Origin: Podarcis pityusensis
Lineage: Eukaryota
Strand: one strand, 5' to 3'
NCBI GenBank assembly: GCA_964106645.2
Contig: OZ078259.1
Length of the DNA stretch: 64,000 nt
Below are positions 30,103-55,597 of the stretch, piece after piece. The notes beneath the pieces were generated by a model. That model saw only the letters and a program-made list of their open reading frames with translations, made no database searches and was not told the DNA's origin. Within the stretch, counting starts at the first letter, position 1, and each line of letters starts with the position of its first letter. Both the position numbers and the translations under genes were made by a program.

Positions 30103-30908
30103 TGTTGCGGTGGGGGCTGCCAGGACACTCCAAAGTTGGGGGCGGACTAATTGTTCGTTGGCCACTGATGCGATTGGGGCTTCCCTTGTTGTTGGGAAGA
30201 AGTTAATGTTGCCATTTGTTGATTGACAGCCAGAAATGCTAAAACTCCTTGCACGAGGCTAGGGCTTCCTCTTTTCGACCGTGCATCGGATTGCCCGTCC
30301 CCCCCTCCCTAGAATTAGGGTTGTTCGCTTTGACCTTGCTATGCCTGTCATGGGGTCGTCTGCCGTTGGGGCAGGGGCCTGGTAGGAATTTTGTCCATCT
30401 GGCTGATTGGCTGGGGCCATTTGGTTTTTTGCCTACTGCATAGCAAATCATCACAACTTGTAAGGTTGCGGTTAGGCATTGGTTTATGGTTTGGTTGGTT
30501 GAGGGGAAGTGGTTGAGTGCCTGCCCTTGGTAGGTTGAGTGCCTGCCCCTCTAATGCTGCTGCTGCAAGGGATTCCGTTAAAGGAATTGGGGGCTAACTA
30601 TTGCTTGTCCACTCTGTCAAGGGGGCTCGGGCTATAGCAATGAGCTCCTGGTTGCATTTGGGGTGAGGGCAGGTTCCCTGCTCCGCGTAACCCCCAAGTG
30701 TATTCCCCTATTCTGACTTTCGCATCGTGCAGAATGTCAGTCTGTCCCCCATGGTGGGGGCAGATAGTCGCAACCAATGCCTAAGCAACCACTCACAAAT
30801 TTGTATTTCAATAAAGTTGTGGCCAAAATTATGCCAAAAATCTTAAACAAAAAATTCTGTGTGATGTGTGAGTTATTGGGGTGGCCCTGGGGACCTCGAC
30901 ACGCAACA
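30103..30908 (+). mobile_element. Non-autonomous DIRS/Ngaro-like repeat, copy 1
   Basis: tgttgcg...cgcaaca ends, no TSD, aataaagttgtggcc motif, homology to copies 2 and 3. Confidence 0.65.
30381..30437 (+). other. ENE-like U-rich internal-loop RNA structure
   Basis: GGUAGG-AAUUUUGU-CCA...UGG-UUUUUUG-CCUACU. Confidence 0.55.
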
Positions 30909-32147
30909 TAATAGCAGTGGGTCAATTCTAATCATGAACAGCTCTGGAAATTACATTTATTGCACAGAAATCATAGGTTATACCCTATTTCTTTGTAAAT
31001 GCTTGATTTCCAAGGGTTTGTATATTAATTTTGTTCATATCCTTATCCACTCAAGCTTTGCAATTAAAAAAGTGGTTCAAATGAGTAGGTAATATTCTCA
31101 AGTCAACATGTCATCTGCAGCAAAGAAAATCAAGTTTGCATTTGTTGATTAGATAACAGGTCAACCATACCATGATAATAGCATAATTACAATTGTGTCA
31201 TCAGCAGAGTGTGTGATTTGTAGTGTAAAAGGAATGGAAGACTTCAAAGTCCAGCATGATCAAAACTGAATGATTTAATTCATGGCACCAGTGATGCATA
31301 TGTTACTCAACATGCAGTAAAGTCCCACTATTTGTCATGAAACTTAAACTAAGTTCTGCTCCAGGAATTGAGTTACAATGAGCATTATGTTCAGCCTCAT
31401 GGTCTAAATCAGGGGTGGGGAGCCTTTTTCAGCTTGAGGGGCACTTTCCACCTAGGGAAACCTTACAGTGGCAGCAAGCCAATAATGGGTGGGGTATGGG
31501 GGAAGTGGGTGGAGCAATGAATGCAACTCTTTCCTTTATATAACAGGTTACATACATTCCAGCCACACAAATGTCTGAGGCTTCTATCTCTCAATAAAAG
31601 CAAGCAAGAGGTATCATGGTAGTTGAAGGACACATCCCAGTCTGGCGAAAATACTCAAGGAGGGTGCAGAGCAGATTCTAAGGGCAAAGAGGCTCTTGTA
31701 ACTGGGGATGCATCAAATGGCATGGGGCCAAGAAGCACCTTCCCTCATACAATAGTAATCATGGAACCATATGAAGACATAGCAGTGCAAGTGGCTTACA
31801 TGAATAATTGAACCCTGCAACCTTAAGCTCCCAGCTTCAAGATTTTGCCCTTCAGTGCTTGGAGGATAGCAAGATTCAGCAACAGGGACAAAGCAAAGTA
31901 GGTAGGGCCAGTCAGTGTGGCCCTGTTCCACATTTCCATGCATTGGACATTGAATTCCTGAATAGGGGTTTTGTGACCTTCCATTTGGGATCTGGAACAT
32001 CAGGATGTTAATTATCCAATAACATAGGGAGTAACACAGGAAGCTTATGCTGAATCAAAGTATTGGGCCACCTAGCTAAGTATGATCCACACTGACTGTG
32101 GCTCTCCAGAGCTTCAAATACAGGTCATTCCAAGCCCTGCATTCCAA

Positions 32148-32360
32148 GCCAGTGTGACGTAATGGTTAGAGTGTTAGACTCGGAACCCCACTCAGCCATG
32201 AAGCTCACTGGGTGACCTTGGGACAGTCACTGTCTCTTAGCTTACCTACCTCACAAGGTTGTTGTGAGGATGAAATGGGGAGGAGGAGAACCAGGTGACC
32301 ACCTTGAGCTCCTTGGAAGATAAAGGTGGTCTATAAATGTAATAAATAAATAAATAAATG
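32148..32360 (+). mobile_element. MIR/CORE-like tRNA SINE (Squam3-like)
   Basis: gccagtgtgacgtaatggttagag...gggtgaccttgggacagtcac...(taaa)n. Confidence 0.75.
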
Positions 32361-32410
32361 ATGATTATGTTGTAAACCACCCTGTTATCTTCGGATAAAG
32401 GGCAGTATAG

Positions 32411-32452
32411 AAAACAAACAAACAAACAAACAAACAAACAAACAAACAAACA
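32411..32452. repeat. (AAAC)n microsatellite at the end of an L2-type tail
   Basis: Read directly. Confidence 0.9.
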
Positions 32453-35330: not shown

Positions 35331-36281
35331 ATAAAAAAATGCATTTTTGTATTCTAACTAATTTTATATGCACACTTTCTCCAAGTACATTAATTTCTGT
35401 ACACATTACAGCAATATGGGCAACTGCACTGCAAAATTCATTGAAGTGTGGATTTTGAAGACTGGGTGTATTTTTTTGTTCATTAAATTTCTCCCTTAAT
35501 CCCAAGGAGGCCTTGGCTTTAAGGGCAAAATAAATACCTTGTTTCTCTGATCCATTTTATTGCACTCTTTTCATAAAGGGAGAAGAAGAGATCCACTGGT
35601 TTTATGTACTGTATTTGGTATAAAATCCATTTGGCCATTTGTTTCTTAGCCTCCCCTCAACCTTCAGTGCTGCATGTCAGATCCCAGATGGCCCAGATGA
35701 CTACCTACCTAGTAGTCTTCAAAGAGAGTCAGAGCATCACTATTCTGATGTCCCTTAATGAAGTAGTAACCACGCTGAACGCACTCTTGTGCCAGGAAGC
35801 AAGCTTATACATGTTTGCTATGTTCAGTAGCACTTACTCCCAAGTAAGCATGTAGTTAGGGATGGAGGAGAAATTCAATTCACATTTGATGACAAACGTA
35901 TTTAATTTGTACTTTTTGGAACAAGATGTGAACTGAAATAAAGCAGTTCTTCAAAAGTCACATTTATCTGAATTTTGCAGCATGGTTCTTTAGCCATGTA
36001 ATGTGTGCTAAAGTGCATACTAGGATAATGTACGGGCAACTCCTATTTTGCACACATTCAAAGATCTTGCGACCATGTATACATGCATCGCTACAACCTG
36101 AAAGTGGCAGGAAAAGGAGTCGGAACAGGGGTGCAGTGGAGACAGAATGGGCTTCCACGTGCTCCGCCGATGTATGTGGGGGTCAGGAATGCAAACCCCA
36201 TGTAAAACAGTCATTCTCTGTATGCATACAAATGCATATATTAGTCAAAATAATATACAAAAATATGTTGTTTTAGGGATA

Positions 36282-36765
36282 AAGTGGTACCTCCAGTTAC
36301 AAACGCTTTGGGTTACAAACGCTTCAGATTACAGACTCCACTAACCTGGAAGTAGTACCTCAGGTTAAGAACTTTACTTCAGGATGAGAACAGAAATCGC
36401 GGGGTGGCGGCGGGGTGGCGGCGGGGCAGCGGGAGGCCTCATTAACTAAAGTGGTATCTCAGGTTAAGAACAGTTTCAGGTTAAGAACAGACCTCCAGAA
36501 CGAATTAAGTTCTTAACCAGAGGTACCATTGTACAGTGGTACCTTGGGTTACAGACGCTTCAGGTTATAGACGCTTCAGGTTACAGACTCTGTTAACCCA
36601 GAAATAGTACCTCGGGTTAAGAACTTTGCTCCAGAATGAGAACAGAAATCATGCGGTGGTTGCGCAGCAGCAGCGGGAGGCCCCATTAGCTAAAGTGGTA
36701 CCTCAGGTTAAGAACAGTTTCAGGTTAAGAATGGACCTCCAGAACGAATTAAGTTCTTAACCAGA
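36282..36765 (+). mobile_element. Head-to-tail dimer of CAGTGGTACCTC MITEs
   Basis: Copy A 36282-36531, shared TA at 36532-36533, copy B from 36534 lacking its last TIR bases. Confidence 0.85.
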
Positions 36766-38919
36766 TGTAATTGCTTTGCAAAAATGTGTATATTAGGCAA
36801 AACTGCATACAAACACCTGCATGTCAACATAAATTTCCTGATGTGCATTTATGAGAACTTTTAAAAATAAATGAATTGCAAACTGGTGTGGAAATGAAGA
36901 CTGAAGATTGGAAGAGTGAGAAAATGAGAAAAACAGAAATTGACAGGTTCACACAGCTCTAAGCTGGAGCATTACTTGATTGTTTTCGTTTTCATTCTGC
37001 TTCTGTGTAATAGCATACAGAAGTGGACTGTGGCATTATTTCGTAAAGTAGTGACATATTTTACAACCCAACTTCCCTATAACAAAAAAAAGAAGGAAAC
37101 CAGCTGTTTATAGCAGGTATTAAACCCCTACAGAGAATTTTAAATAGCACCCTCCCCGCTCTTTGTAGTTATTCCTGTTTTGTACAGATCAAAAAGAAGT
37201 ACAAAGAAAACCGAGGCTGGCTGCAGGTACTTTCGTCCTGATGGATTTAACATTTTGCATATCTTAACATGCAGTGCCTAATGCCTGTTCTTCCTGTTTA
37301 ACCAGCACAACACTTTTATACTCTATCTATTAGCTTTGTATGTGGCCATAAATCTCCACCTACAGACTATCCATTAGGGAGCAGGATCAAAAGAGAGGTA
37401 TTTAATGTTCTGCATTGTGTGTTCTCATGCTAATCCAGCCTCAGTGAGATTTAGAAAACTCAGTAAGGTTTATAGAAGCAAACGCCAAAGATTCACTTTT
37501 AAAAACACACACACAATAATCCCTAAATGCACAGCAGTCCACCGGGGAGGACCACCAGAGGCACAGGTACCTTTGATACCTGATAGATGCTCTACCTCCT
37601 CTAAAGCTGGGAATAAAGAGAGGGGAGGTTGTTACTGCTTTGCACATGACATTTTATTTAGGGGGGGAAAGACATACGGCAGGGAATATTGATGATGGTG
37701 CACCAATGCAAGAATCCAGCTAGCATGCTAAACCATTGAAGTGTTAAGATTTTAATGTACAATGACTTAAAATATAAATTTACTGTGTATGAAATGCATT
37801 ATGCCAATATATTTTATGTCTGTGTGCATTCACACACACACAAACTTGTTTAATGGGTTGATTCCTTCAGTTTTCTTCAATAATTGTTTCAAGCTTCTGG
37901 CATTTATTTGGTTCTGATCTAGTCACATGCCGGCAGGACGTCTGTACTTGGGGATATTGGAATGGAGTTTGATGAAGTTTGACACACCATGCCTGAAATT
38001 GGTGGGGGGATAAAGAAATGCAAAAAATTGCAAACAGAATACTCAATAGTGTAAGCCGTACTTATTCTTACACCTGAAATAGAGAGCGATACTGGAGGAC
38101 ATGCATTCTGGAATCTGCTGCTCAAGGCAAAACCATTGTGTTGGGTATGTGCAAAGCTGATTCTTCATGAGTTAGTTGTTTTCGTATTTCAAGACTAGTA
38201 TTATTGACTCTGATTGGCAACAAGATTGCGAACAAGGTTCCCCCACCCTGCTCCCAGGTCCTACTATGTGATTTATTTTGAACTGGCAGTACAGCCTTAG
38301 AGATGAAGTTTATGTTTCCAACCCTGTGTTATTATTTCATCGTGAGGCAGGTCCTGGTGACCCAACTCTTTGCACTGAAAGTAATAATATATTAACTTTT
38401 CATTTATATTGTGTGTTGCTGCATTCATCCCCCTAACATACTGAATCAATGGGTCGGTAGCGGGTCACAAGTCTGGGAAACTGTGGCCCTCCATCTGTTG
38501 CTGTACTCCAACTTCTATCAGTCCTAGCCAGCATGGCTAATGTTCAGAGATGAAGGGAGGGCCCAAAGTTCCCCATCCCTACCCCAGACTGTCTGCCACA
38601 GAAGAAATCTCATGCAAAAAGGCCTTCAAAACACTTTCTCTTTGCTCTGTACCGTGCTGTCTCTAGGCTCTAAATGATGCCGCTTAAATCCTGTTTATGA
38701 CATCTTGGCTGAGGGGTTAATCCCTTCATTGCTCAGGAGGTGGCACCATGACAATATAATGAGATTCATATTAACAAGAGATGAGTCCTTCTCCAAAGGA
38801 GACAAAAAAATACAGATGGCAGTGTGAAACCTACTAATTATTAAACTAATATACCAAGGCACTTTTAAACGGGAGCATTTAGTAGGCTAAAATCAGCAGT
38901 GCTAGATTTATTATATGTT

Positions 38920-38923
<4 letters not shown>

Positions 38924-38957
<34 letters not shown>
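38924..38957. repeat. (GT)n microsatellite
   Basis: Read directly. Confidence 0.95.
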
Positions 38958-38958
<1 letters not shown>

Positions 38959-39829
38959 TTTCTCCTGATTTAATTCAGATGATTAAATGACCAATAGAAT
39001 ATGAGAGGGAAAGAGCGAGAAAGAGAGAGAAGAGCCAAGCATTAAAATTTACTGAAGTAGAGACCCTGCAAAAGTCAAAGCTCCGACAGGTTTATTCTAG
39101 TGTATCCTTCTGTGACTTGCTAGCCGGTTCTTCGTAATGGTAGATGGGCAAGGCGAGAAGAGTCGAGGCTTTAAAGTGGAAATGAAATTTCCTGCTCCAT
39201 GGAAACTTGAGCACACAGTCATTAGTCTGTGTGACCGAAGAAAGTTCTGGGAAGTTTAGTGTATCAACCCACAGCAGGCCAGTCGCTGGAGAGCATGCTC
39301 AATTATTTAAGGGCAGTATGTTTCTGACACCCTTGTGGTGAATTCCTAATGAAGTGAGCCACCGGGAGAAGCATACCCTGGCGACCTCAAGGATTAAGGT
39401 GGGAAGGAAAGGTGGGGGGAGGCCATTAAACTGAAGCTGAGGCTGCCAAGTTGAGAGTTTGCAGTGAAACAGGGGGGGAGCGGAGAGAGAAAAAAATGAA
39501 AGCAAAATGTAATTCTTGGAACTTTTCCTCACCTGGCATGCCCCTAGGAAGAGATGTGCAATTGCATATCTTGCTTCTAATGAACAGTTGCTGACACTTA
39601 ATTGGTAGCAAAATAAAAGCAGATACCTGTGGACACAGCCTCATTTCTCCATGTTTTCCTTCCAGAGTGTCAGGGGATTTATACATACAGAATGGAAGAG
39701 AAAATGCTAGGTATTTGTAAACAGGAAAGGGACCTGATGAGATTTTTTTTATTGCTTTTACGCATGGTTCACATTTTCCTCAGCAGTTTGATGTTCCAGA
39801 GGGAGCACTATCCAGTTTCGCTTCCTTTG

Positions 39830-40418
39830 AAAAGAGATGCCAACTAAACATCAGGAAGAACTTTCTGACAGTAAGATGTTTCTGACAGTGGAACGGACTC
39901 CCTTTCAACTCCCGTTCATTGGAGGTTTTTAAGCAGAGGTTGGATGACCATCTGCCATGCATGATTTAGCGGAGAGTCCTGCATTGCAGAAGACGCGGGT
40001 GGCGCTGTGGGTAAAGCCTCAGTGCCTAGGACTTGCTGATTGTAAGGTCGGCGGTTCGAATCCCCGCAGCGGGGTGAGCTCCCGTCGTTCGGTCCCAGCT
40101 CCTGCCCACCTAGCAGTTCGAAAGCACCCCTATGTGCAAGTAGATAAATAGGTACCTCTTTATAGCGGGAAGGTAAACGGCGTTTCCGTGTGCGGCGCTG
40201 GCTCACCAGCTGCAGCTTCATCACACTGGCCATGTGACCCAGAAGTGTCTTCGGACGGTGCCGGCTCCCGGCCTCTTAAGCAAGGTGAGCGCGCAACCCT
40301 AGAGTCGGACACGACTGGCCCGTACGGGCAGGGGTACCATTACCTTTTACCTGCATTGCAGGGTTGGACTAGGTGAGCCTCAGGGTCCCTTCCAACTCTA
40401 CGATTCTATGATTCTATG
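39830..40418 (+). mobile_element. CR1 3' end with (ATTCTATG)n tail, interrupted by a Sauria SINE
   Basis: aggaagaactttctgacagtaag...ggtcccttccaactctacgattctatgattctatga. Confidence 0.85.
39990..40349 (+). mobile_element. Full-length Sauria SINE
   Basis: gacgcgggtggcgctgtggg...ggttcgaatccc...ccctagagtcggacacgactgg, accttt-type tail; 12-bp TSD cctgcattgcag. Confidence 0.92.
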
Positions 40419-40730: not shown

Positions 40731-42105
40731 GCAAATACATATCTATAAGCAGACAGCATTGCCTTTATCAGAGTGCAACTTGTTCCCAGAGTACAACTTG
40801 TTCAGAACCCAACACACATCCCCAGGCACATCCCACTTCCTAGCTAACTCCAACTAGAAAACTTTTAGGGCTCTGTCTCTTTGCCTCAGCCAGTTCTAGC
40901 AACTGTTTTTGCCATTACTATCCACTCCACTCCACTCCACTGGAGGCGAGTAAGCTCAGCAGTCAGGATGCTTACTGGGTGAAATGGTTTATTGTTATTA
41001 TTTATTGAATTTATATACCACCCTATACCTGCAGGTCTCCATGCAATATGAATATAATTCTTATGATTCAGGAAACTAACTAAGCATAGGTGAGGGCTTG
41101 GCATGGCTAGCTGACATTACTGTGCTTCCTTCCTTGTATACATTCACTGTATAGGTATGTAATGTCTGCACAATCCCACCATGAGCCTTACCACCCTGTG
41201 ATTTTCAATGTGCTGATTTGTTGTTGTTGGCCAGCAAACAAAATGTGGTGTTCTAGAACTCCACATTTCTAGCAGTGGTTTACAGTAACTTTGCTAGTTG
41301 TCTGCACAGATTAAGAAGCATGCTGGAAAAGCAAGAATGTGTTCACTTGAGTAGCTATTTATGCTAATGGAAAGAAAGGTCTATGAATTAGCTCCCTGTA
41401 ATGGTAAACAAGATTAGAGTTAAGTGCTTTTTGGGGGGGCTGAGCAAGAAACAGTCAAAGGTTAATTGCACAGGAGAGAAAGAAGAAAACCCATAAATTA
41501 GGAAACCAGAGTCTGGAAAACAGGAAGGTCAGAGAACGAAATGGGCAGGTGAAATCTGCAGAGACGGTGGAAAGAAATCAAAGTGGGGGAAGTGGCAATG
41601 GGCAGTTTAGCTGGTCAGTCTATGAAGGATGGGCATAGATTCTTTCATGGATAAAGTGGACAATCATGGTACATAAAGGGTACAGCAGAAGATAAAACAA
41701 ACTTTATGGTAAGAGAGATAAAAGAAAAAGATGACGGTATTTGAAAAGAGAGTGTTAGAAAATGCTTTTAAAGTAGTTAATTGCCGTTGTAAAAAGAACA
41801 ATAACCAAGGTTTAATTTCTCAAACTAACTATGCAGATAAAACCCATTAAGAAGGAATGAACAAACAATAGAAAATGCAAAGGGATCATCATAAGCAACA
41901 GAGGGCATGAAATAATATATTTCCCCTATGACGGTTTGCAATTGTGAAAAACAAAAGGAATGCACACAATTGAAATGTCTCATATGGCCTCATATACCAA
42001 TTGGAAAAAATATGAGTACAGCGGTACAAATGAACAATTGAGAACTAATGATAATTTATGTAGATGAGGGACAGGCAAGATAGCAGGCCCTTCACCTGTT
42101 CCATT

Positions 42106-42106
<1 letters not shown>

Positions 42107-42142
<36 letters not shown>
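42107..42142. repeat. (CA)n microsatellite
   Basis: Read directly. Confidence 0.95.
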
Positions 42143-42146
<4 letters not shown>

Positions 42147-43499
42147 TGTCTCTTAAGACCCCATATACACTATATATTTAAAGCTCTATGATACCACTTT
42201 AAACAGTCATGGCTTCATCCAAACAATTCTGGGAGCTATGGTTTGTTAAGAGCACTGAGGTTTGCTAGGAAGCCTCCTATTCCCCCCACAGAGCCGCAAT
42301 TTGTAGAGTTCACTGGGAAGAGGGATTTACTGTTATAACACTCTGGGAATTATAGTTCTCTGAAGGGAAGAGGGGTTGCCTAATTACTCTCAGCAGTTAT
42401 GAAGGTGGGGGGGGGATCAAAATGGAGCAGGACTTGGAGGAAGGTGGGGTGGGGGGAAGAGGAGAAGCTGGCTCTTTCATTATACCTCAGATAATTCACA
42501 CATCTATTCAGTATAGCTAGGTTGTGCCGAAGCACTCAGGCTCTCTTCTCCCAAGAGTAGCCGGGCAGAGACCCCATTATCTTTTCTCCCAGCATTAAGC
42601 TACTCATCACCATTTAGACTAATTCACCATCAATTTTCTCATTAGGAACACTTTGCATTTCCAGAGGCTAAAAACATCCAAACCAGGCTATTTTACCCGG
42701 TAGTGATATATGTGTTTATTTATTTATCCCCCCCCCCCAACCAGTCTAATTTTCCCCTATGGGATTTTTCTTGTGTGTATAAAAGATAAAAGGAGAAGGA
42801 GGAGGAGGCGGAGGAGAAATGACACTTTTATGATGGGTGGCACCTTTCCTCACACCAACAGGTGTTGTCGCAGTACTTCCAACATCCTTGTATTTCCCCC
42901 CAAATTAAATATAACTGCACCTAGCTGAGAGTTAATGATAAACACATTCCCACTGGGAGATGCATAATAGTGCATGCATTGTTGATCGTTTTAAAATTAG
43001 AAGCTGCTTTTGTTTACATGATTTTTAGTGCACTTCTCTACCCCTTTGGTTCAGTGATCCTGCATGGTGGTAATGAGGTGATGTCTGCTTATGAATTTGA
43101 ATTGATTCCCCAATAACTCTGCAGAAGGCAAACATGTCTATGCTTCAAATGTATTGCACACACCCCTGCTGCCACCCCTTTTCCTTTTTGGAAAACGTCA
43201 ACATGGTTTGGTTGTATTCATTAGTAACTGAACAGTGGGAAGCAGTCTTTCTACTTCTGAAAAGGCATGCATTAAGTGTATCTTTCAATATAATAAATGG
43301 TAATAAAACATTACTCTTCCCCCAGGCATTTGATGGGTGAAAGATACTGTTCCCGGCAACCTTGAAATTATTAGCTGTGAGGGATATGTGGGTGCACAAA
43401 AATGTATTTTTTTTAGTTATTCTTAATGTTTTTAAATGCATTGAACATTTGTTGGTTTGTGCTATTTATTTTATTCCAGGGTTTTTCAGTTTAGGGAAA

Positions 43500-44179: not shown

Positions 44180-44181
<2 letters not shown>

Positions 44182-44213
<32 letters not shown>
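44182..44213. repeat. (CA)n microsatellite
   Basis: Read directly. Confidence 0.95.
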
Positions 44214-44215
<2 letters not shown>

Positions 44216-44394
44216 ACTTCTCCCTCCTTTTGCAACACTTGCCATCACTCCTCCTACAGGGTGTGCTTCGGTTAGCCATCTTTTATGAGTAGAAATTTGG
44301 TGGGAGCCCCTGATTTCCCACAGAGCTACAGTTCTCAGAATGATTCAACAGTCAATCCCATTTCCCATGGAATTCTGAGAAATTGAGGGTCTGC

Positions 44395-45155
44395 GTTGCA
44401 CGCGGGCCCAAGGCCCCTTCCCCACTATCCTGGAGTGGGAGATTGAGCCCAGCCCAGGCGATGGCCCCACGATCACACCATGGCCTATTGGCCAATCAGA
44501 GATCAGTGGTGTGATCATGGGGGCATATAAAAGGTGGCGATCCATTTCTGGGGATTTACCTGGCTTCGCAACGCTGAGTACCCACCTGCCCGCCCTGTAT
44601 TTTAGGTGTCGGCTTTGGCCTTGCTCTGGACTTTGGTTGGTTCCCTGTTTTGGAACAGGGGCTGGGTAGGAATTTTTTCCATTTGGCAAATTGGCACTGG
44701 CCACTTGGTTTTCGCCTACCTCTTAGCAATTGTCACAACTTTTGTAAGGTTTGGCGGTTAGGCATTGGCTTATTGTGATGTGGGGGAGGAGAGGTGCAGC
44801 CATCACCTGCCCCTCCAGGTACAAGAGTATTCTGGTAAAGGAATCTGTGGATCTGGATCTCGTCCGAAGTCTGCTTGAGGGGCTAGGGCCATGCCAGGAC
44901 CCAGCGGGAACCTCGAGGTGAGCTTCAGTTGCTTGCCATCAACGGAGCTCCCTCGTTTGGTTGTTTACCTTTCCAGACTTCCTGCAAGGCAGACAGGAGT
45001 CAGATAGTTATTGCCAATGCCTAAGCCAATACCACTCACATTGCTGTAATCAATAAAGTTGTGGCCTAAATTTTTGCCCATTAACCTTAAATTAAAATTC
45101 TGTGTCAGTGTGTATTTATTTATCCTTGGGGGTGCGCCGGGTCTTGACGCACAAC
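44395..45155 (+). mobile_element. Non-autonomous DIRS/Ngaro-like repeat, copy 2, inside a MITE
   Basis: gttgcacg...acgcacaac ends, CCAAT and TATAAAA near the 5' end, aataaagttgtggcc; host MITE resumes after it. Confidence 0.7.
44665..44720 (+). other. ENE-like U-rich internal-loop RNA structure
   Basis: GGUAGG-AAUUUUUU-CCA...UGG-UUUUCG-CCUACC. Confidence 0.6.
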
Positions 45156-45254
45156 TGTGGCAGTATCATGGGAATAGGGGTCTCCTAACAATTCTCAGAG
45201 ATCTTACCAAATACAGCTTCCAGTATTATTTAGGAGAAGCCATGACTGCTAGTA

Positions 45255-45410
45255 AGACGCGGGTAGCGCTGTGGTCTAAACCACATGACCTGGAAGCTGT
45301 CTGCGGACAAACGCCGGCTCCCTCAGCCTATAGAGTGAGATGAGTGCCGCAACCCCAGAGTCGTCTGCGACTGGACCTAATGGTTAGGGGTACCTTTACC
45401 TTTACTTTTA
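45255..45410 (+). mobile_element. Internally deleted Sauria SINE
   Basis: 5' head fused to 3' body; 15-bp TSD ccatgac(t/c)gctagta. Confidence 0.85.
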
Positions 45411-46100: not shown

Positions 46101-46268
46101 CAGTGTTTTTTTTTCTGGGGGATGCAGACCCCTAAATATTTTGTGAATCTTTGTACTTTTGTCCATTTACTGTATTTATTTTCCCCGATTTGAACTATAA
46201 AATGGTGGTTTTCTTGAGTCAAAATGAGAGCACCCCTAAACTTTTTTTTTTTTAAGAAAAAAGCACTG
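46101..46268. mobile_element. Short hAT MITE
   Basis: TIR cagtgttttttt / aaaaaaagcactg; 8-bp TSD cttacaaa. Confidence 0.85.
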
Positions 46269-48934
46269 CTTACAAATGCAAATCAAATGTCACTTTTTTA
46301 AAAAAAAAATCACAGACATTGGAATATGGAGAACTGAAAAAAGAGAAACTGAGAGAAACTGAAACAAACAGATTCACCCATCCTTAGCCTGAACAATTCC
46401 AATCTTTATGGTGGCTCAGTCAGGTTTGACAATTGGGGTGTTGCTGGCATTCCCTGTAACACATTGCAAGGTATAATCTTAGGCATATATTTTCATGCAA
46501 TGGTAGTGGAAAGGTAGATGTCTTTGTTGCAGGTTTAAGGAGTTGGGGTTGTTAACCCTACTCAGAGTTAAACCTATTAAAATAAATAGACATGACTAAT
46601 TTAGGTCCATTAATTTCAATGGGTCTACTCCAAGTAGAACTTAGTTGGATACAACCCTGGGAAAGCAGAGCCACTCTGATAAGCTCAGAGATGAGGTCCT
46701 TTAGGTGCTTTCTCTCCCTGAACTGTTTCCAATTTCCATCCTCAGTGGTAAGAGCTATGTAACTTTAAGAACCAGTGCCACTATTTGCCTCCTCCCTGTC
46801 CATAAAATTTCCTTTTATGTCTCTCTTTTAGATTATAAGAGTGAGGGAAGGGACTATAACATTCATCTGTAAGTTGTTGTGGGAGCTTTTTTGGCTGGGG
46901 AGCAGGGTAAAAATGCTTTAGAGAAATAAACAGGCTGATTCCCAAATCAGTGCACCATTAAAAATAATCTATTCAGCATAAGCAACCTTTGAAAAGGGGC
47001 TGCTAGCACATTTCAATTACAAATGCAAATCAAAAGTGCCAAAGATCAGGAATAAAAATCCCTAACTCTGTTGTAGAGCACAGACTTTCATGCAATAGTG
47101 AAAAAACCATTTATGCTGAAAAATGAGGGAAGAGTTAGAAAAAGCTTCAGTGATGAGGGTCATCAGCAAAAGCAGTGATGGGGGAATTACTGAGAAGCAG
47201 AAGTTGAACTCTGGCAGATTCCTACAATGTTACACCCCAGCTAGAGATTATTGTGCAGCAGTTGCCTAGGAAGGAAACTTTTCATGTCTGCCTTCCTAAA
47301 TTTGGACTTCTAACATAACCTAGTGTGACAAGACATAGCTCTGAAAGGTTTCCTGTTTTGAAGTGCAATATTGCAGCCTTGGAAGTAATTGGTGATGGGG
47401 TATAGTTCATTTTGCAAAACAGAACAAAAAGCCCACAGATTATACCTTTAAAGGGACCAAGGAGCAAGCTGTGAGGCTAACTCTACATTTTTACCCTTGA
47501 ATAGAATAAGCTGAGCATGAACAGTGAGCGTTAATGCTGGCAGTAAGCTTATGCTCCTTGGATTAAACAAATAAGTGGGAGAGTTTTAAGAACAGGTACT
47601 GGCTGGAGATGACATTATGGGTGCTGTGAGATATTTAGCAAAGGAAAATGTAATCTCACAAATGCTTGACTCACAAATGCCAGAAAATAAATAAAACACA
47701 GATGCAACCAAAGATGCATGCATTATCATCACCATTACCATCATATTGGATCCAAGTGACACATTTGTTTGGGCTGGACATTTGAATAAATTTCTGCCAT
47801 TTCCCCTTGTATGGGAAATATGTGGATCACATGTTGTGATCGCGTGGAGACAGTGGCATTTCAACAGGATATCTCTTTGACGCCTTATGAAGGGGCTGCT
47901 TATTAAACTGATAAGTAATGATAGAATCATTCTAAGGTGTGTCCTGAATAAGGAGTGATTTGCGTAGAAATGATGATGCCATGAGAAAGGGCTGGGGTCT
48001 TCTGCTAAGACCATAGTATGAGAAAGTACAGTCATAATGGAGGTGGGCTCCCCTTAAAGGCCATCAAGGTAAGGCACTGGATAGCTGCCCAGGCATCATC
48101 AATGCATGAGGCTAGCACAGGAGCAATGAGCCACCACCCTTGGTCACTGGCCAGCCCACTGACCAGTCAGGAGAGTGCTCTGTTTCTGAATACCAGTTGC
48201 TGGAAACCATAGAAGAAGAGAGTGCTTTTGTGCTTGAATCCTGCTTAACAGGACACTGGACTAGATGGGCCTTTGGTCTTATTGAGCAAGCTCTTATTAT
48301 GAGTGTAAAAGTTTGATGACATCATCATTTGATACTAAAAATACCATGGGGCCCAATAGTTCCCTGGCTTAACTGGAGATCCCAATGACAGCTGTAGGCT
48401 GGAAGGAGTGGGAGCATGTGCAGCTCTTCTTAGAGAGCTTTTTCAGCAAAGGCCCACAAATTCTTCATTTTCTATGCTTTGCTTTGCATTCTTGTCCAGC
48501 AAATAAACACTGCTAAGGCATCAACCTGGCTACTTCCTGCCTACTTGAATCCAAAATAAGCCCTTACCCCTTGGCAGGGCACTCCTTCACTGAGGAATGC
48601 CCTTCCTTCTGCCCCTCTGTTGCTTCAGGCATCTCGTAAAGGCGTAACCTTTTCTTCCAGACTTTCCCTGACCCATAAAATGGGACCCTGTTTTTATAAT
48701 ACTATTTTACTGGTTGCTATGTTGTATCCCTGTTTTTATTATAGTGTTTTACTGGTTTTTAAATAAAATTGCTGAATGAGGCTGCAACCTTCTGGACCCT
48801 ACGTTTGCTTCCTTGTCTTTGTCCTGCTTCAGACAAAGCAAGTGTTTTGTGCCTGTGCCTGAGGAAGGGCCACAGTTTAGTGGTAAAGCACCCGTTTTAT
48901 TTGGAGATGGTGCCATATTTATTCACATGCTAAT

Positions 48935-49618
48935 ATGCCCTCCAACATTTCTCTGATGAAAATAGGGACATCCCATTCCATAATGATAATTTTAATATTT
49001 ATACCCCACACATCTTCCTGGGTTGCCCCAGTCACTCTGGGCAGCTTCCAACATATATAAAAACATAATGAAACATTTAAAAACTTCCCTATGCAGGATT
49101 GTTTTCAGAGGGCTCAGAGGTCAGATAACTCTATGCCCTCCAACATTTGTCCAATGAAAATAGGGACATCCTAAGGAAAAGTGGGGGATGCGGGTGGCGC
49201 TGTGGGTAAAACCTCAGCGCCTAGGACTTGCCGATCGTATGGTTGGCAGTTCGAATCCCTGCGGCGGGGTGCGCTCCCGTCGTTTGGTCCCAGCGCCTGC
49301 CAACATAGCAGTTCGAAAGCACCCCCGGGTGCAAGTAGATAAATAGGAACCGCTTACCAGCGGGAAGGTAAACGGCGTTCCGTGTGCTGCGCTGGCTTGC
49401 CAGATGCAGCTTGTCACGCTGGCCACGTGACCCGGAAGTGTCTGCGGACAGTGCTGGCTCCCGGCCTATAGAGTGAGATGAGTGCACAACCCTAGAGTCT
49501 GGCAAGACTGGCCCGTATGGGCAGAGGTACCTTCACCTTTTAAGGAAAAGTGAGACATTCTGGGATCAAATCAGAAACCAGGGACTTCTCTGGAAAATAG
49601 GGACACTTGGAGGGTCTG
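48935..49618. mobile_element. Composite hAT-like MITE with a duplicated end and an L2 fragment
   Basis: atgccctccaacattt...gaaaatagggacatcc at 48935 and 49133; far end aatagggacacttggagggtctg. Confidence 0.65.
49184..49540 (+). mobile_element. Full-length Sauria SINE
   Basis: Same head, body and tail as 39990; 12-bp TSD taaggaaaagtg. Confidence 0.92.
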
Positions 49619-51594: not shown

Positions 51595-51862
51595 GGTGAG
51601 CTCCCATTGCTTAGTCCCTGCTCCTGCCAACATAACAGTTCGAAAGCATGTCAAAGTGCAAGTAGATAAATAGGTACTACTCTGGCAGGAAGGTAAATGG
51701 CGTTTCCGTGCGCTGCTCTGGTTCACCAGAAGCGGCTTAGTCATGCTGGCCACATGACCCGGAAGCTATACGCCGGCTCCTTTGGCCAGTAAAGCGAGAT
51801 GAGCACCGCAACCCCAGAGTTGGGCACGACTGGACCTAACAGTCAGGGGTCCCTTTACCTTT
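51595..51862 (+). mobile_element. 5'-truncated Sauria SINE
   Basis: gtgagctcccattgc...agttcgaaagc...gtccctttaccttt. Confidence 0.85.
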
Positions 51863-53782
51863 GCACATATTTTAACAAATGCATGCACTAGGTTAAAGGA
51901 TGCATAAAAACACACATTTATTGGTGAAAAATAATGTGTATAAATACATTATATAGGGGAAAATAGAATTATATTGGTTTGCAAAAATGTGTACATTGGG
52001 AAAAATGCATACTAACATGTGCACATTAGGATAAATTTGTACTAAAATCCTGATTAATTTTCATGAGGACTTAAAAAACAACATACCCTCACACTGATGT
52101 GGAAACGTGTAGAACTGAATTTCAGATTGGAACAATTAGAAACTGAGAGAAACCAAAACTTGCCCATCCTTACTTGGAACACTCTTATCTTACCTGCAAA
52201 CACAAAAATGGGGAATATGACTAGGGGAGGAGAGCCTGGTGTTGTTGACCACATCTCCCAGTATCTCACCATTGACCATCCTGGCTGAGGGTAATGGGAT
52301 TTGTAGTCCAAAACTAGGTTGGAGAATGCTGTCCTTGGTCTATTTGGCTGCAAATTGCCTATTTCAGCTGGTAACAACTCTCCAAAGTCTCTGGCAGAAG
52401 CCTTTTCTATCACCTGCTCCCTTACCATTTCACTGAAGATGGGAGATGGGGTTGAAATGGTTTCTTCTTTATCAAGTATGGACAACCTGTTGCCCTCCAG
52501 ATGTTGTTCCATGCCAACTCATTGATGATGGGAGTCTAGCATCTTCTGCAGGTCCACAGGTTCCCCACTCATGTTCTACATACATAACATATAATCTACC
52601 ACCGGTATAATCGGTTTCCTGAAAATAGCTAGATGTCTCAATGGTCTAACTCACTATAAGGCACCTTTGCTCATGCAAGGGTCCACCCCCCCCCCCAGGA
52701 GGCATTAAGAAGCTCCATCACAAAGTTGGTCCAAGGTCCATGGAAGCCTTACTTGATTTTTTCAGTAGATTTCCAACAGGGCACTCAAATTCTGTAGGCA
52801 ATCTACTCTTGTTTGGTTTCAGTGAAATGGTAGGTTGCTTCTCCCAAGGATGCACAAGACGCAGTTATATAGGGAAAAGAGGTGGGTGGGGGGAAGATCC
52901 TCCAGAAACCTGTCCAGGAATGGTGAAATTACAACGTTCCCACTAAATCTCTAGCAGCGTCACCTTCTAGGTCAGGAGAAAATGGTTTAACATAAATGTG
53001 AAGTGTAAGAAAATATGGTTTGGTCTGAGTGCCATTCTGGAGGGGAGCACAGGGAATTTATACGCTGAGGCAGCAAAGCAGACACTTTAGCCTTGGTCTA
53101 TTTGTCCACCTTGAAGTATTCAACATGGATTTGACAAAACGTTAAGAATGATGAATGAGGTATAAATAAAAGGTCCTTTTAAAACTGCCTGCCATCAATG
53201 GATTAAGTGGAACAGCTGTGAATTTAACAGTGGACAATGTGCAATCTCCTGGGACTTCACTGTGAACCACAGCCAGTTTCCATTGATTACTTGGGGAAAT
53301 GGACCATAATAAACCTTCCATTCTACAATTGTTAATTGTGACAAAAACATACAACCAAAACTCACCAAAACCCAACCTCTAGAACTGGACAGGACTCTCT
53401 TCAGATTGTTGCTAAACTATATATACATAATAATTGTTTTGTTTGTTCCTTATTCTGATTAATAGTAGAATGAGGAAGATATATATGAATCTGTGATAAA
53501 TAAAGACTCTGTCTGCAGCTGACATGAGAATACTATCTTTTCATTATCAGAAATCATTTTTCTGCATGACGCTTGACATGAGGATGAGCGTAGTTCAACT
53601 GATGAGGAGTCACAATCTTTTTTCAATATCAAGTCTAATTTATATTTTTATTGCTTACATTTTGTATTTATATGGAGATTGTAAAATAAGAAAAGAAAGA
53701 AAGAAAGAAAGAAAGGGGGATAAAAGACTGCAGTGCTGTAGTTCTATGCTCACTTAGGCCCCATCTGTATGATACATGTCAC

Positions 53783-53932
53783 AGAATCTAGAATAATAGA
53801 ATTGTTGAGTTGGAAGGGACCCCAAGGGTCATCTAGTCCAACCCCCTGCAGTGCAGGAATATTTTGCCCAATTTGGGGCTCAAACCCACAACCCTGGGGT
53901 CAAGAGTCTCATGCTCTACTGACTGAGCTATC
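53783..53932 (-). mobile_element. tRNA-Lys-like SINE with CR1 3' tail
   Basis: Minus strand gatagctcagtcagtagagcatgagactcttga...gggtttgagcccc, then cctgcactgcagggggttggactagatgacc...ggtcccttccaactc. Confidence 0.75.
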
Positions 53933-54806
53933 TGTTTGACAAGCACTATTGTACCACTTTTAAAAGTCATGGCTTCCTGCAAAAAATCCTGGGACCTGCA
54001 GTGTGTTAAAGGTGCTGAGAGTTGTTAGGAGATCCATATTCCCCCACAGAGAGCTACAATTCCCACATTCCCTGGGGAGAGAGATTGATTGTTAAACCAC
54101 TTTGGGAATTCCCTTGATTTCTCAATTTGAGTCTCCTGTTTCAGTTGCAGTGTTGCCTTAATATGATTGTTTTATTGTGTGTTTTAATTATGGATGCTTA
54201 TAATTTAATGTCTGTATAATGGATTTTTTTATATTTTGTAAACTGTTTTAGAAGCTTATTTTAGCATTAAGCAGTGGCACAAAAATAACAACCCATAAGA
54301 AACAATTAATAATTAATAAACAATCCATAGGAAATTCAACATATTTTCCAGACTTAAGACTAAGACACCGCTACAGACAAAAATATTGTTGTTTTGGTTC
54401 ACTGTTGGTTTGGGAAATGGAAATGAGAGTGGTTTCCATTAAGCTGCAATGGGGGGTGGGGGAAACCACCCGTCCTCTCCCCTATTGCAAGGCTTGGTGC
54501 AAATACAGTATGCTTGTTTTCCAGCACCCTACATTTACAGATATTCACTGGATCGAAGCACTCACCTTTCAGCCATATCTCTTTCCCCAGCAGCAGCAAT
54601 AAATGAATTATATTTGGAAGAATGTGTTCATTATAACCTTTTGGGATCAGTTTCCAAATTGGAAGCCCCCTTTCTGGAAGTCCACAAAAGTTGCCCTTTG
54701 TCATAATAATCTTGACCTTTACCAGTTAATTAGTCATTCTTCTATAACCTAGTCTTCCTCGTTCTAACATTTGGTATAAGCTGCCTTGTCTCTCAGGAAG
54801 ATTAGT

Positions 54807-55597
54807 TTGCGTGATCAGGCTGCGACAGCTCCAGCCCCCAGGGATCATAAGAAAGGAATAAAGACTCCAACAACGTGTTATGGAATTAAAATTAGGCTGG
54901 AACTTTATTAAACTTCCAAATGTAGGAAGACCTTGGCTTAGGCCTTGGGCGTGTATCCCTCCCAGCCCCCTGGCCGGGGGAACTGGGGCACAATAGGGTA
55001 AATGTGATATAGGGGTACACTGTGAGACGTATGTGTACGCAGGCAGCCCAGCCCATATCCTCACATGCAGGGTAGTTCACTGACAACTTTTCGGTGTATG
55101 GCCAGTGACACCCATATATATAACCCCTTTTAAGAGGGGACCCTGGAATTGCTGCCGTGGGGGGGGTGAGTCACCACTTCACGCCCCCCCATTATAGGGA
55201 GGAAAAGACTAAAGGATTCCACCCAAGACCATAAACCACCCAAGTTGTGACAAATTGCTACTGGGAAGACAAAACCTGCCAATGCAGGAAAATTTCTTTC
55301 CGGTCCTTCAACAGCAACCAGTCAAAGACCACAGCAGCGCCCACTAAACAGGAAGAAAAAGTTGACCTGCAATCAAGAAAACATTAAACTAAGGGAGGGT
55401 AGGGTGGGTGAATCTCCTGAACCGACTGCCTGGCTACTGTTGGCTGCACCCCCTATTTATAAATGGGGCTGGCCCCACCTCCCGGCAGTAAAACTTGACT
55501 ACCAAGTCTGGGCGTGAACCTCCAAATATTAACACTGAGAGGCAGGCCAGCCACTGTTTGCCATTAAGCTCCCTGGGAACTGTAGGACTGCGTGCAA
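54807..55597 (-). mobile_element. Non-autonomous DIRS/Ngaro-like repeat, copy 3 (most divergent)
   Basis: Minus strand ttgcacg...cacgcaa, TATAAAT, tagcaatttgtcacaactt, aataaagtt; no TSD. Confidence 0.6.
55261..55302 (-). other. ENE-like U-rich internal-loop RNA structure
   Basis: GGAAAGA-AAUUUU-CCUGC-AUUG-GCAGG-UUUUG-UCUUCCC. Confidence 0.55.

What the first reader, a model, noticed from the sequence alone, without database searches (positions are those of the whole stretch)
30381..55302. ENE-like poly(A)-capturing RNA motif conserved in three divergent lizard retroelement copies
Seen: all three ~0.8-kb elements share the pattern lower stem, AAUUUU(UU), CC-initiated upper stem closed by GG, UUUU(C)G, lower stem. 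Copy 1 (30381-30437) pairs GGUAGG/CCUACU and copy 2 (44665-44720) GGUAGG/CCUACC. Copy 3 (55261-55302, minus) has a rewritten lower stem GGAAAGA/UCUUCCC with one mismatch and a short CCUGC/GCAGG hairpin. The stems change while both U-tracts persist. Known: this is the layout of the KSHV PAN and MALAT1 ENE, a U-rich internal loop forming U-A.U triplexes with an A-tract, and ENEs are known in plant and fungal TEs. Inference: these elements stabilise their RNA with a poly(A) triple helix. I am not aware of this being described for vertebrate DIRS/Ngaro-type elements, but I cannot search the literature.
Basis: partly seen in the sequence, partly recalled or inferred. Interest (0 to 1): 0.85.

Follow-up and report, generated by a model that had tools for sequence, protein, structure and literature searches.

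The report
U-rich-loop hairpin in lizard LTR-like repeats
Three old, divergent copies of a lizard LTR-like repeat keep a small RNA hairpin whose two facing runs of U resemble the poly(A)-gripping "ENE" stability element, but three copies cannot show that it works that way.

Summary
At all three sites the sequence folds into a lower stem, an AAUUUU-type 5' loop strand, an upper stem opening CC and closing GG, a UUUU(C)G 3' loop strand, and the lower stem again. The three sites are homologous positions in three homologous units. Each unit has a TATA-type promoter (degenerate in copy 1), about 530 nt of transcribed sequence, AATAAA, a conserved CCA and a GT-rich downstream element. This is the layout of a solo LTR with a long R region. 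I found no evidence for the DIRS/Ngaro label.

The hairpin is one arm of a Y-shaped domain. A predicted long-range helix loops out about 250-290 nt and brings the hairpin near the poly(A) site.

The ENE reading is plausible but unproven.
- A loose descriptor of the motif matches 13 times in this window, against about 4 in shuffles.
- A covariance model built from copies 1 and 2 finds copy 3 only at E=0.11.
- Covariation is anecdotal with n=3.
- Only four U per strand are common to all copies.
- Purines separate the U runs from the lower stem.
- No Rfam family matches.
- No further copies could be retrieved.

ENEs are already known in TE LTRs and in stickleback retroviruses, so at best this is a new member of a known kind. 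I put about 0.3 on the ENE mechanism.

The parts
30381..30437 (+). Copy 1 hairpin (P3): GGUAGG / AAUUUUGU / CCA..UGGCU upper stem-loop / UUUUUUG / CCUACU
   Evidence: MFE -18.6 kcal/mol, z -1.66. Kept in the whole-R MFE and ensemble, with pair probability 0.79-0.88 and U runs 0.8-0.97 unpaired.
44665..44720 (+). Copy 2 hairpin (P3): GGUAGG / AAUUUUUU / CCA..UGGC upper stem-loop / UUUUCG / CCUACC
   Evidence: MFE -19.0 kcal/mol, z -2.30. Displaced by an alternative fold in longer context.
55261..55302 (-). Copy 3 hairpin (P3): GGAAAGA / AAUUUU / CCUGC-AUUG-GCAGG / UUUUG / UCUUCC(C), with one A.C mismatch
   Evidence: MFE -13.6 kcal/mol, z -2.32. Kept in the whole-R MFE and in the 96-nt domain fold.
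30336..30446 (+). Copy 1 Y-shaped domain. P1 (UUGCUAUGC 30336-30344 with GCAUAGCAA 30438-30446) encloses hairpin P2 and the U-loop hairpin P3.
   Evidence: MFE -46.8 kcal/mol, z -1.95.
44621..44729 (+). Copy 2 equivalent of the Y-shaped domain. P1 is UUGCU 44621-44625 with AGCAA 44725-44729. P2 is CCCUGUU/AACAGGG.
   Evidence: RNAalifold columns 37-147. The single-sequence fold of this copy prefers an alternative, z -0.5.
55257..55338 (-). Copy 3 Y-shaped domain. P1 is GCUGCUG 55338-55332 with CAGUAGC 55263-55257.
   Evidence: MFE -32.0 kcal/mol, z -1.87.
30472..30784 (+). Copy 1 long-range helix: UUAGGCAUUGG 30472-30482 with CCAAUGCCUAA 30774-30784. It loops out about 290 nt.
   Evidence: (I1) and the MFE.
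44758..45024 (+). Copy 2 long-range helix: 44758-44769 with 45013-45024, 12/12 complementary.
   Evidence: (I1) and the MFE.
54935..55237 (-). Copy 3 long-range helix: GGUUUAUGGUCUUGGG 55237-55222 with CCCAAGGCCUAAGCC 54949-54935. It has 15 bp, one bulge and two G.U pairs. Relative to copies 1/2 there is one compensatory A-U to C-G change.
   Evidence: The MFE, and sequence read.
30810..30875 (+). Copy 1 3'-end signals: AATAAA 30810-30815, CCA at +19..+21 after the hexamer, and a GT-rich downstream element around 30855-30875.
45052..45118 (+). Copy 2 3'-end signals: AATAAA 45052-45057, CCA at +21..+23, and a GT-rich element around 45098-45118.
54850..54909 (-). Copy 3 3'-end signals: AATAAA 54909-54904, CCA at +21..+23, and a G/T-rich stretch downstream.
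44490..44533 (+). Copy 2 promoter-like region: GGCCAATCAG (CCAAT box) and TATAAAAG 44526-44533, about 140 nt upstream of the hairpin.
55455..55461 (-). Copy 3 TATAAA box, about 160 nt upstream of the hairpin.

Best explanation
The three sites are the same conserved RNA hairpin in the long transcribed (R-like) part of three solitary LTR-like units of one old squamate retroelement family. Each unit carries its own TATA-type promoter (degenerate in copy 1), about 530 nt of transcribed sequence and a complete poly(A) site.

The hairpin is one arm of a Y-shaped domain. Its internal loop presents at least four U on each strand, directly under two C-G pairs.

In the copy of R at the 3' end of the element's RNA, a long-range helix loops out about 250-290 nt. 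The hairpin then lies roughly 80-90 nt of path from the start of the poly(A) tail.

The most likely single mechanism is ENE-like. The tail folds back into the U-rich loop, forms a short stack of U.A-U triples, and slows deadenylation and 3'-5' decay.

Shown: the motif, the homology of the copies, its sense orientation, and the promoter and poly(A) signals.
Predicted only: the folds and the long-range juxtaposition.
Inferred only: tail binding and stabilisation.
For: - All three short segments have this fold as their MFE structure. Copies 1 and 3 keep it in the whole-R and domain folds, with U runs 0.8-1.0 unpaired.
- The copies are homologous despite 52-64% identity.
- AATTTT is among the four longest invariant runs in R.
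- The lower stem keeps 5/6 pairs through 5 changes, two of them double. Simulated P = 0.064.
- The upper stem is 20 nt shorter in copy 3 yet is still closed by C-G pairs next to both U runs.
- G.U pairs in the lower stem of copy 1 and in the long-range helix of copy 3 work only on the sense strand.
- AATAAA, a conserved CCA at about +20 and a GT-rich element define a poly(A) site on the same strand.
- The long-range helix appears in the MFE of all three copies.
- Literature: an ENE is a stem-loop with a U-rich internal loop next to G-C pairs (PMC7583470). ENEs occur inside TE LTRs (PMC13541005), in stickleback retroviruses (PMC7583470), and in the mobile Copia93/Evade element, where the ENE raises RNA stability and mobility (PMC12501189).
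Against: - Only four U per strand are common to the three copies (4/6, 6/4, 4/4).
- AA on the 5' strand and G or CG on the 3' strand lie between the U runs and the lower stem. The G-C platform therefore does not directly abut the U loop on that side.
- The hairpin is 332-373 nt upstream of AAUAAA in the linear sequence. Its nearness to the tail rests on predicted helices.
- In copy 2 the fold loses to an alternative.
- A loosely defined motif is common: 13 in the window against about 4 in shuffles.
- The CM from copies 1+2 scores copy 3 at 14.2 bits, E=0.11, next to a noise hit of 13.6 bits.
- The RNAalifold covariation term is +0.68, which is no net support.
- Transferring one copy's whole-R MFE to the others does no better than slid controls.
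- No Rfam family matches, even at E<=10 on 100-nt stretches.
- The same hairpin would also sit about 110-170 nt from the cap in the 5' copy of R, where a tail clamp has no role.
- From my memory of the abstract, the published genome-wide ENE search reported only one fish among animals, so this motif probably fell outside its model.
Confidence: 0.3

Rival explanations
1. The Y-shaped domain is a general leader/R-region RNA structure of a retroelement, serving packaging, dimerisation, strand transfer or nuclear export. Its U-rich internal loop and conserved apical AUUGGC are protein- or RNA-contact sites, not a poly(A) clamp.
For: - As part of R, the domain would sit about 110-170 nt from the predicted start site in the 5' copy.
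- It is embedded in a multi-helix domain whose neighbouring blocks (TAGCAA, TCACAAC) are at least as conserved as the U runs.
- The apical ATTGGC is invariant in all three copies although the upper stem differs.
- From general knowledge, retroviral R and leader regions are dense in functional hairpins (TAR, poly(A) hairpin, DIS, psi).
Against: - No known retroviral cis-element model matches.
- Facing U runs bracketed by G-C pairs are not a described feature of packaging or dimerisation signals.
- No palindromic loop typical of a dimerisation site is shared by the three copies.
Confidence: 0.25
2. The conserved letters act in DNA rather than RNA. An inverted CCAAT box (NF-Y type) flanked by AT-rich tracts downstream of the start site acts as a transcriptional, possibly antisense-promoter, element, and the hairpin is a by-product.
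For: - ATTGG is invariant. In copy 1 it reads CTGATTGGCTGG, a textbook inverted CCAAT/Y-box.
- CCAAT motifs recur in these units: upstream of the TATA box in copy 2, and in both arms of the long-range helix.
- Sequence conservation is better supported than covariation.
Against: - The stems change while pairing is kept. G.U pairs are tolerated only on the sense strand.
- The flanks of the CCAAT core in copies 2 and 3 fit the NF-Y consensus less well.
- This reading does not explain two facing U runs.
Confidence: 0.15
3. The fold regulates polyadenylation. The U runs and the long-range R pairing mask or expose AAUAAA and the cleavage region, so that the signal is ignored in the 5' copy of R and used in the 3' copy.
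For: - AAUAAA lies at the 3' edge of a long R and must be bypassed at the 5' end.
- In copies 1 and 2, CACAACUU just 3' of the hairpin pairs with AAGUUGUG just 3' of AAUAAA in the MFE.
- In copy 1, AAUUUUGUCCA is 91% complementary to UGGCCAAAAUU in the tail region (I5).
- The RNAalifold consensus pairs UUUGRCC at the foot of the domain with GGCCWAA after AAUAAA.
Against: These pairings are weak or absent in copy 3. They are short and AU-rich and have no statistical support.
Confidence: 0.1
4. There is no function. The hairpin is a leftover of common descent in a locally slow-evolving stretch, and its likeness to an ENE is coincidental.
For: - Loose matches to the motif are frequent by chance.
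- n=3, with no significant covariation.
- An invariant run of 6 is about what is expected once in about 400 columns of which 40% are invariant (computed).
Against: Copy 3 is about 52% identical to the others, yet it keeps both U runs, the AA, 5/6 lower-stem pairs after 5 changes (P about 0.06), and a re-formed upper stem after a 20-nt length change.
Confidence: 0.1

Closest known systems
KSHV PAN RNA ENE (single-domain ENE)
   Same: Both are a stem-loop with a U-rich internal loop bracketed by helices, on the sense strand of a polyadenylated pol II transcript. The U runs directly abut an upper stem that begins CC and ends GG. The known mechanism is five U.A-U triples plus three A-minor triples with the poly(A) tail (PMC7583470, PMC13541005).
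   Different: Here only four U per strand are shared by all copies. Purines (AA; G or CG) separate the U runs from the lower stem. The linear distance to the poly(A) site is 330-375 nt. There is no sequence or model match, and no experimental evidence.
ENEs and double ENEs of transposable elements (rice hAT TWIFB1, Arabidopsis Copia93/Evade, LTR-embedded ENEs of plants and fungi, stickleback retroviruses)
   Same: The context is a mobile-element RNA. Some of these ENEs lie inside both LTRs (PMC13541005). Evade shows that such an element raises RNA stability and mobility by blocking deadenylation (PMC12501189). A vertebrate precedent exists in stickleback retroviruses (PMC7583470).
   Different: Most plant elements are double-domain, with a conserved A triad and a 3'-end pocket. 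This motif has a single U-rich loop. None has been reported from reptiles or other amniote TEs in the papers I could read. Homology to any of them was not testable because no sequences were available in the tools.
MALAT1 / MEN-beta triple helix and the MALAT1-like loci of anole lizards (Zhang 2017, as cited in PMC10869381)
   Same: U-rich motifs in a hairpin capture an A-rich 3' end, and dozens of such loci are reported in anoles.
   Different: Those use a genomically encoded A-rich tract and a tRNA-like RNase P site, with G/C interruptions in the U motifs. Here there is a canonical AAUAAA poly(A) site, no tRNA-like structure (Rfam), and no conserved A-rich tract after the hairpin.
Structured R regions of complex retroviruses (HIV-1 TAR and poly(A) hairpins, the long HTLV/BLV R with the Rex-responsive element). 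From general knowledge.
   Same: Both have a long, highly structured R between the start site and the poly(A) site, long-range pairing around the poly(A) signal, and possibly a splice donor within R.
   Different: There is no sequence or model similarity. The class of the lizard element is unknown, and no internal coding region is present in the window.

Membership tests
ENE (poly(A)-binding triple-helix stability element) | Stem-loop with an internal loop carrying U runs on both strands | tested here: met
   Present in all three copies and is the MFE fold of each short segment.
ENE (poly(A)-binding triple-helix stability element) | U runs long enough for a stack of about five U.A-U triples, as in PAN | tested here: inconclusive
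   The runs are 4/6, 6/4 and 4/4 U, so at most four facing U positions are shared. Whether four suffice cannot be judged here.
ENE (poly(A)-binding triple-helix stability element) | G-C pairs directly adjoining the U-rich loop (A-minor platform) | tested here: inconclusive
   Upper side: C-G, C-G abut both U runs in copies 2 and 3, and the 3' run in copy 1. Lower side: G-C pairs exist but are separated from the U runs by AA and by G or CG. In copy 3 the first pair is A-U.
ENE (poly(A)-binding triple-helix stability element) | Position near the 3' end of a polyadenylated (or A-tract-ended) transcript, on the sense strand | tested here: inconclusive
   The hairpin is on the same strand as AATAAA, CCA and the GT-rich element, but 332-373 nt upstream. 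Predicted long-range helices shorten the path.
ENE (poly(A)-binding triple-helix stability element) | Stems supported by covariation across the family | tested here: inconclusive
   n=3. There are two double changes in the lower stem (P about 0.06). The RNAalifold covariation term is +0.68. The global transfer test equals the slid controls.
ENE (poly(A)-binding triple-helix stability element) | Match to a curated covariance model | tested here: inconclusive
   No Rfam 15 family matches at gathering score or at E<=10. I could not confirm that Rfam holds an ENE model, so the blank says little.
ENE (poly(A)-binding triple-helix stability element) | U-dependent binding of oligo(A) and stabilisation of an intronless reporter | not testable with these tools
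   Needs bench work.
LTR of an LTR retrotransposon or endogenous retrovirus (solo LTR) | U3-R-U5 logic: promoter, transcribed repeat, then poly(A) signal with downstream element inside one unit | tested here: met
   CCAAT and TATA in copy 2, TATA in copy 3, and a degenerate GCTAAAAC at the matching place in copy 1. AATAAA, CCA and a GT-rich element are present in all three. Similarity runs about 65-95 nt past AATAAA, so these are not processed retrocopies.
LTR of an LTR retrotransposon or endogenous retrovirus (solo LTR) | TG...CA termini with a 4-6 bp target-site duplication | tested here: inconclusive
   One search gives candidates (for example copy 1 30152-30908 with TAAT). About one such hit is expected by chance, and TAAT also follows the homologous point in copy 3. 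Repeat homology of the flanks places copy 2 at roughly 44447-45152.
LTR of an LTR retrotransposon or endogenous retrovirus (solo LTR) | A full-length relative with paired LTRs, PBS/PPT and gag-pol | tested here: not met
   None is in the window. Only three solitary units are found, with no retroelement ORF beside them. Other genomes could not be searched.
DIRS / Ngaro tyrosine-recombinase retroelements | Tyrosine recombinase, RT and methyltransferase ORFs with inverted terminal repeats plus an internal complementary region, or split direct repeats | tested here: not met
   No such ORF or repeat architecture surrounds any copy. This does not exclude that full-length relatives elsewhere are of this type.
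MALAT1-like triple helix locus | Encoded A-rich tract followed by a tRNA-like RNase P substrate | tested here: not met
   ARAGORN finds nothing in 29000-57000. The only weak Rfam tRNA hit, 53873-53930 on the minus strand, lies about 1 kb away in another repeat. No conserved A-rich tract is present.

The most novel reading that the evidence does not exclude
A single-domain ENE variant sits inside the long R of a squamate LTR-type retroelement. It would be the first in an amniote mobile element. Its U4-6/U4-6 loop is offset from the lower stem by conserved purines, and a long-range R helix, not linear proximity, delivers it to the poly(A) tail.
Probability: 0.3. Interest if true: 0.6.

Novelty: new member of a known kind. 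Interest (0 to 1): 0.4.

Why it matters
If confirmed, it would extend poly(A)-clamping triple helices from plant and fungal transposons and one fish retrovirus group to reptile mobile elements. It would give a natural example with a shorter U stack and an offset lower stem, which helps define the minimal requirements of an ENE. It would also show a case where RNA folding, rather than linear distance, brings the clamp to the tail.

If it is not an ENE, it still marks a conserved Y-shaped RNA domain in the long R of a squamate retroelement family whose function is open.

Tried and rejected
- Rfam at gathering score on the whole window, at E<=10 on 30000-56000, and on each 100-nt site: nothing relevant.
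- More copies in the window: nhmmer profiles of the whole unit and of the core, and a CM with filters off, found only the three known copies.
- More copies elsewhere, using a 21-base gapped pattern that all three copies satisfy. There were 6 metagenome hits, none with the hairpin and all judged to be chance, 1 bacterial MAG hit and 0 viral hits.
- A 51-aa ORF across the domain as a handle on public assemblies: no candidate.
- TG/CA plus target-duplication search for exact LTR ends: not above chance.
- Whole-R structure conservation, by transferring one copy's MFE pairs to the others: no better than slid controls.
- A MAFFT alignment of the domain alone misplaced copy 3, so the pair-counting tool was not used on it. 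The per-pair table was used instead.
- I did not send a 566-character structure string to the pair-counting tool.
- Rejected readings. Processed retrocopy: similarity continues past the poly(A) site. MALAT1-like locus: no tRNA-like element or A tract. Telomerase-RNA-like gene: no template.
- Tycowski 2012/2016 and Zhang 2017 are not held in the library. Their content is cited only through reviews or marked as memory.
The only consensus lines are those the alignment tool prints on its own.


Full report
**Observation.**
- Copy 1 (30381-30437, +): GGUAGG, AAUUUUGU, an imperfect upper stem CCA..UGGCU/GGCCA..UGG, UUUUUUG, CCUACU.
- Copy 2 (44665-44720, +): GGUAGG, AAUUUUUU, CCA..UGGC/GCCA..UGG, UUUUCG, CCUACC.
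- Copy 3 (55302-55261, minus): GGAAAGA, AAUUUU, CCUGC-AUUG-GCAGG, UUUUG, UCUUCC, with one A.C mismatch.

Folded alone, each segment has this structure as its minimum-free-energy fold, at -18.6, -19.0 and -13.6 kcal/mol and z-scores of -1.7, -2.3 and -2.3. The shared core is AA plus four U on the 5' strand, and four U plus G on the 3' strand. The 3' U run directly follows the GG that closes the upper stem in all three copies. The 5' run directly precedes CC in copies 2 and 3.

**Chance.** One such hairpin means little. A loose descriptor finds 13 instances in the window (both strands), against 4.2 +/- 2.1 in 100 dinucleotide-preserving shuffles. The descriptor asks for a 6-bp lower stem with at most one mismatch, U4+ on both strands with short spacers, and a G-C-closed upper stem.

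The weight of the finding lies in homology.
- BLAST aligns copies 1 and 2 over 30303-30877 and 44589-45120 at 64% identity. It does not find copy 3.
- A profile made from copies 1 and 2 alone finds copy 3 collinearly over 55341-54878 at E=2e-13.
- Three-way identities are 64%, 52% and 53%. The longest invariant runs are AATAAAGTT (9), GCCTAAGC (8), TCACAAC (7) and AATTTT (6).

The 5' U run therefore sits in one of the best-conserved blocks. However, a run of 6 is about what is expected once in about 400 columns of which 40% are invariant.

**What the units are.**
- Upstream of the hairpin, copy 2 has GGCCAATCAG and TATAAAAG (44526) about 140 nt away. Copy 3 has TATAAA (55461, minus) about 160 nt away. 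Copy 1 has a degenerate GCTAAAAC at the matching distance.
- Downstream by 332-373 nt, all three have AATAAAGTT, then a conserved CCA at +19 to +23, then a GT-rich stretch. This is the standard vertebrate poly(A) site.
- Similarity between copies continues about 65-95 nt beyond AATAAA, to a shared CACGCAA. The units were therefore copied as DNA with their downstream element and are not processed retrocopies.
- Promoter, a roughly 530-nt transcribed repeat, a poly(A) site and a short tail is the logic of a solo LTR with an unusually long R.
- The exact ends could not be fixed. TG/CA plus target-duplication candidates are no more than chance gives. Copy 2 is bounded at about 44447-45152 by pieces of another repeat on both sides.
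- There is no retroelement ORF beside any copy. The only RT fragment lies at 17594-17968. The DIRS/Ngaro label is therefore unsupported here, though it is not excluded for full-length relatives elsewhere.

**Structure around the hairpin.**
- RNAalifold on the three R regions keeps the hairpin and nests it in a Y-shaped domain. A closing helix P1 pairs UUGCU.. upstream with ..AGCAA downstream, which explains the conserved TAGCAA. P1 encloses a first hairpin P2 (CUGCC/GGCAG in copy 1, CCCUGUU/AACAGGG in copy 2) and then the U-loop hairpin P3.
- Copies 1 and 3 fold into exactly this shape as single 96-122-nt sequences, with z about -1.9. Copy 2 does not. There, GGAA/UUCC closes a mini-hairpin on the 5' U run, and the ENE-like fold has only 0.13 pair probability in the whole R.
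- A long-range helix is in the MFE of all three copies. It is UUAGGCAUUGG with CCAAUGCCUAA in copies 1 and 2, and GGUUUAUGGUCUUGGG with CCCAAGGCCUAAGCC in copy 3. It shows one compensatory A-U to C-G change and G.U pairs that work only on this strand.
- This helix starts 25-35 nt after the hairpin and ends 24-26 nt before AAUAAA. It loops out about 250-290 nt, leaving roughly 80-90 nt of path between the hairpin and the start of the tail.
- Weaker pairings between the foot of the domain and the stretch after AAUAAA appear in copies 1 and 2 and in the consensus.

**Strength of the structural evidence.** It is modest.
- Between copy 2 and copy 3 the lower stem differs at 5 of 12 positions and keeps 5 of 6 pairs through two double changes. 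Random placement of five changes does this in 6.4% of trials.
- The upper stem differs by a 20-nt length change and still pairs.
- The RNAalifold covariation term is +0.68.
- Transferring one copy's whole-R MFE to another keeps informative pairs no more often than slid controls do.
- A covariance model built from copies 1 and 2 ranks copy 3 first among non-training hits, but at 14.2 bits and E=0.11. A noise hit at 47264-47301 scores 13.6 bits.

Three sequences cannot give a covariation test.

**More sequences.**
- None are in the window.
- A 21-base gapped pattern that all three copies satisfy, and that no shuffle of the window matches, gave six metagenome hits. All lack the hairpin.
- The same pattern gave one bacterial MAG hit and no viral contig.
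- A 51-aa ORF spanning the domain found no relative in the protein collection.
- The tools hold no squamate genomes, so the decisive family-wide test could not be run.

**Comparison with ENEs.** Reviews define the ENE as a stem-loop with a U-rich internal loop next to G-C pairs. [quoted passage not shown]

In favour of the ENE reading:
- the facing U runs;
- the C-G pairs abutting them on the upper side;
- the sense orientation in a polyadenylated transcript;
- high predicted accessibility of the U runs in copies 1 and 3;
- the predicted delivery of the hairpin to the tail.

Against it:
- only four shared U per strand;
- conserved AA and G or CG between the U runs and the lower stem;
- the long linear distance to the poly(A) site;
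- the unstable fold in copy 2;
- no Rfam match, although I could not confirm that Rfam holds an ENE model;
- the hairpin would also sit in the 5' copy of R;
- from my memory of the Tycowski 2016 abstract, that genome-wide search reported only one fish among animals.

The motif is not a MALAT1-like locus. There is no tRNA-like element and no conserved encoded A tract.

**Rivals.**
- A general leader/R structure whose U loop and invariant apical AUUGGC are contact sites.
- A DNA-level inverted CCAAT box. Copy 1 reads CTGATTGGCTGG.
- Control of poly(A)-site use by pairing with the AAUAAA region.
- No function at all.

I rate the ENE-like clamp as the single most likely specific mechanism at about 0.3. 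The other RNA-level role follows at about 0.25, and the rest are lower.

**Novelty.** ENEs are already described in LTRs of plant and fungal elements (PMC13541005), in stickleback retroviruses (PMC7583470), and functionally in Arabidopsis Copia93/Evade (PMC12501189). MALAT1-type triple helices are multiplied in anoles (PMC10869381, citing Zhang 2017). A squamate LTR-borne ENE would be a new member of a known kind, with variant details. It is worth a family-wide covariation test and a simple oligo(A) binding assay, but it is not yet a discovery.

**Handling note.** The element may be an endogenous retrovirus of an animal. I only compared and described the natural copies. Profiles were used for searching only, and consensus lines appear only where the alignment tool prints them on its own. 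None of the fetched contigs looked human.

Noticed in passing
window 30572-30587 (+); 44829-44844 (+); 55139-55124 (-): A second small hairpin in R has an invariant UAAA at the 3' side of a 6-nt loop (GUUAAA, GGUAAA, CUUAAA). Its stem is AUUCC/GGAAU in copy 1, AUUCU/GGAAU in copy 2 and CCCCU/AGGGG in copy 3, giving three fully compensatory pairs (columns 291-295/302-306). Whether this A-rich loop contacts the U-rich loop is unknown.
   Followed up: partly
window 30664-30733 (+); 44920-44977 (+); 55058-54983 (-): All three copies keep a GTGAG donor-like site and, 60-80 nt later, a pyrimidine-rich tract ending in CAG, with branch-point-like TTCTGAC in copy 1 and GTCTCAC in copy 3. This may be a short intron, or a splice donor, inside R. 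It was read by eye and not scored.
   Followed up: no
window 30405-30415 (+); 44688-44695 (+); 55283-55276 (-): ATTGGC (an inverted CCAAT) is invariant at the top of the hairpin in all three copies. Copies 1 and 2 carry the TGGC motif twice, which suggests a small internal duplication relative to copy 3.
   Followed up: partly
window 44292-44446 and 45153-45250; also 42170-42351 and 53928-54110: Another repeat family (GGGAAT..CTCCTAACAA..CTCAG..GAAGCCATGACTG) flanks copy 2 on both sides in opposite orientations. This bounds copy 2 at about 44447-45152.
   Followed up: partly
window 39992-40349, 49187-49542, 51595-51862, 45281-45403: A SINE-like repeat at 76-86% identity, with a tRNA-related head (GTAGCGCTGTGGTCTAAACCAC...) and a ...GGGGTACCTTTACCTTT tail. 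From memory it looks like a squamate (Sauria-type) SINE, which fits a lizard origin for the window.
   Followed up: no
window 13529-13763, 22875-23056, 36280-36769 (tandem pair), 61726-61943: Another dispersed repeat family at 83-90% identity, including a tandem duplication at 36280-36525 / 36532-36769.
   Followed up: no
window 17594-17968 (+): An ORF fragment with a reverse-transcriptase (RVT_1) match, E=1.6e-6, just under Pfam's cut-off. It is probably a LINE remnant and is not linked to the three units.
   Followed up: no
window 14920-15047: A run of 128 N (an assembly gap or masked stretch). Left as is.
   Followed up: no
window 38924-38957, 42107-42144, 44182-44218, 23388-23423: (CA)n/(TG)n microsatellites. 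They probably explain the weak SCARNA7 and EBV-sisRNA Rfam hits at 38808-38972 and 42060-42231.
   Followed up: no
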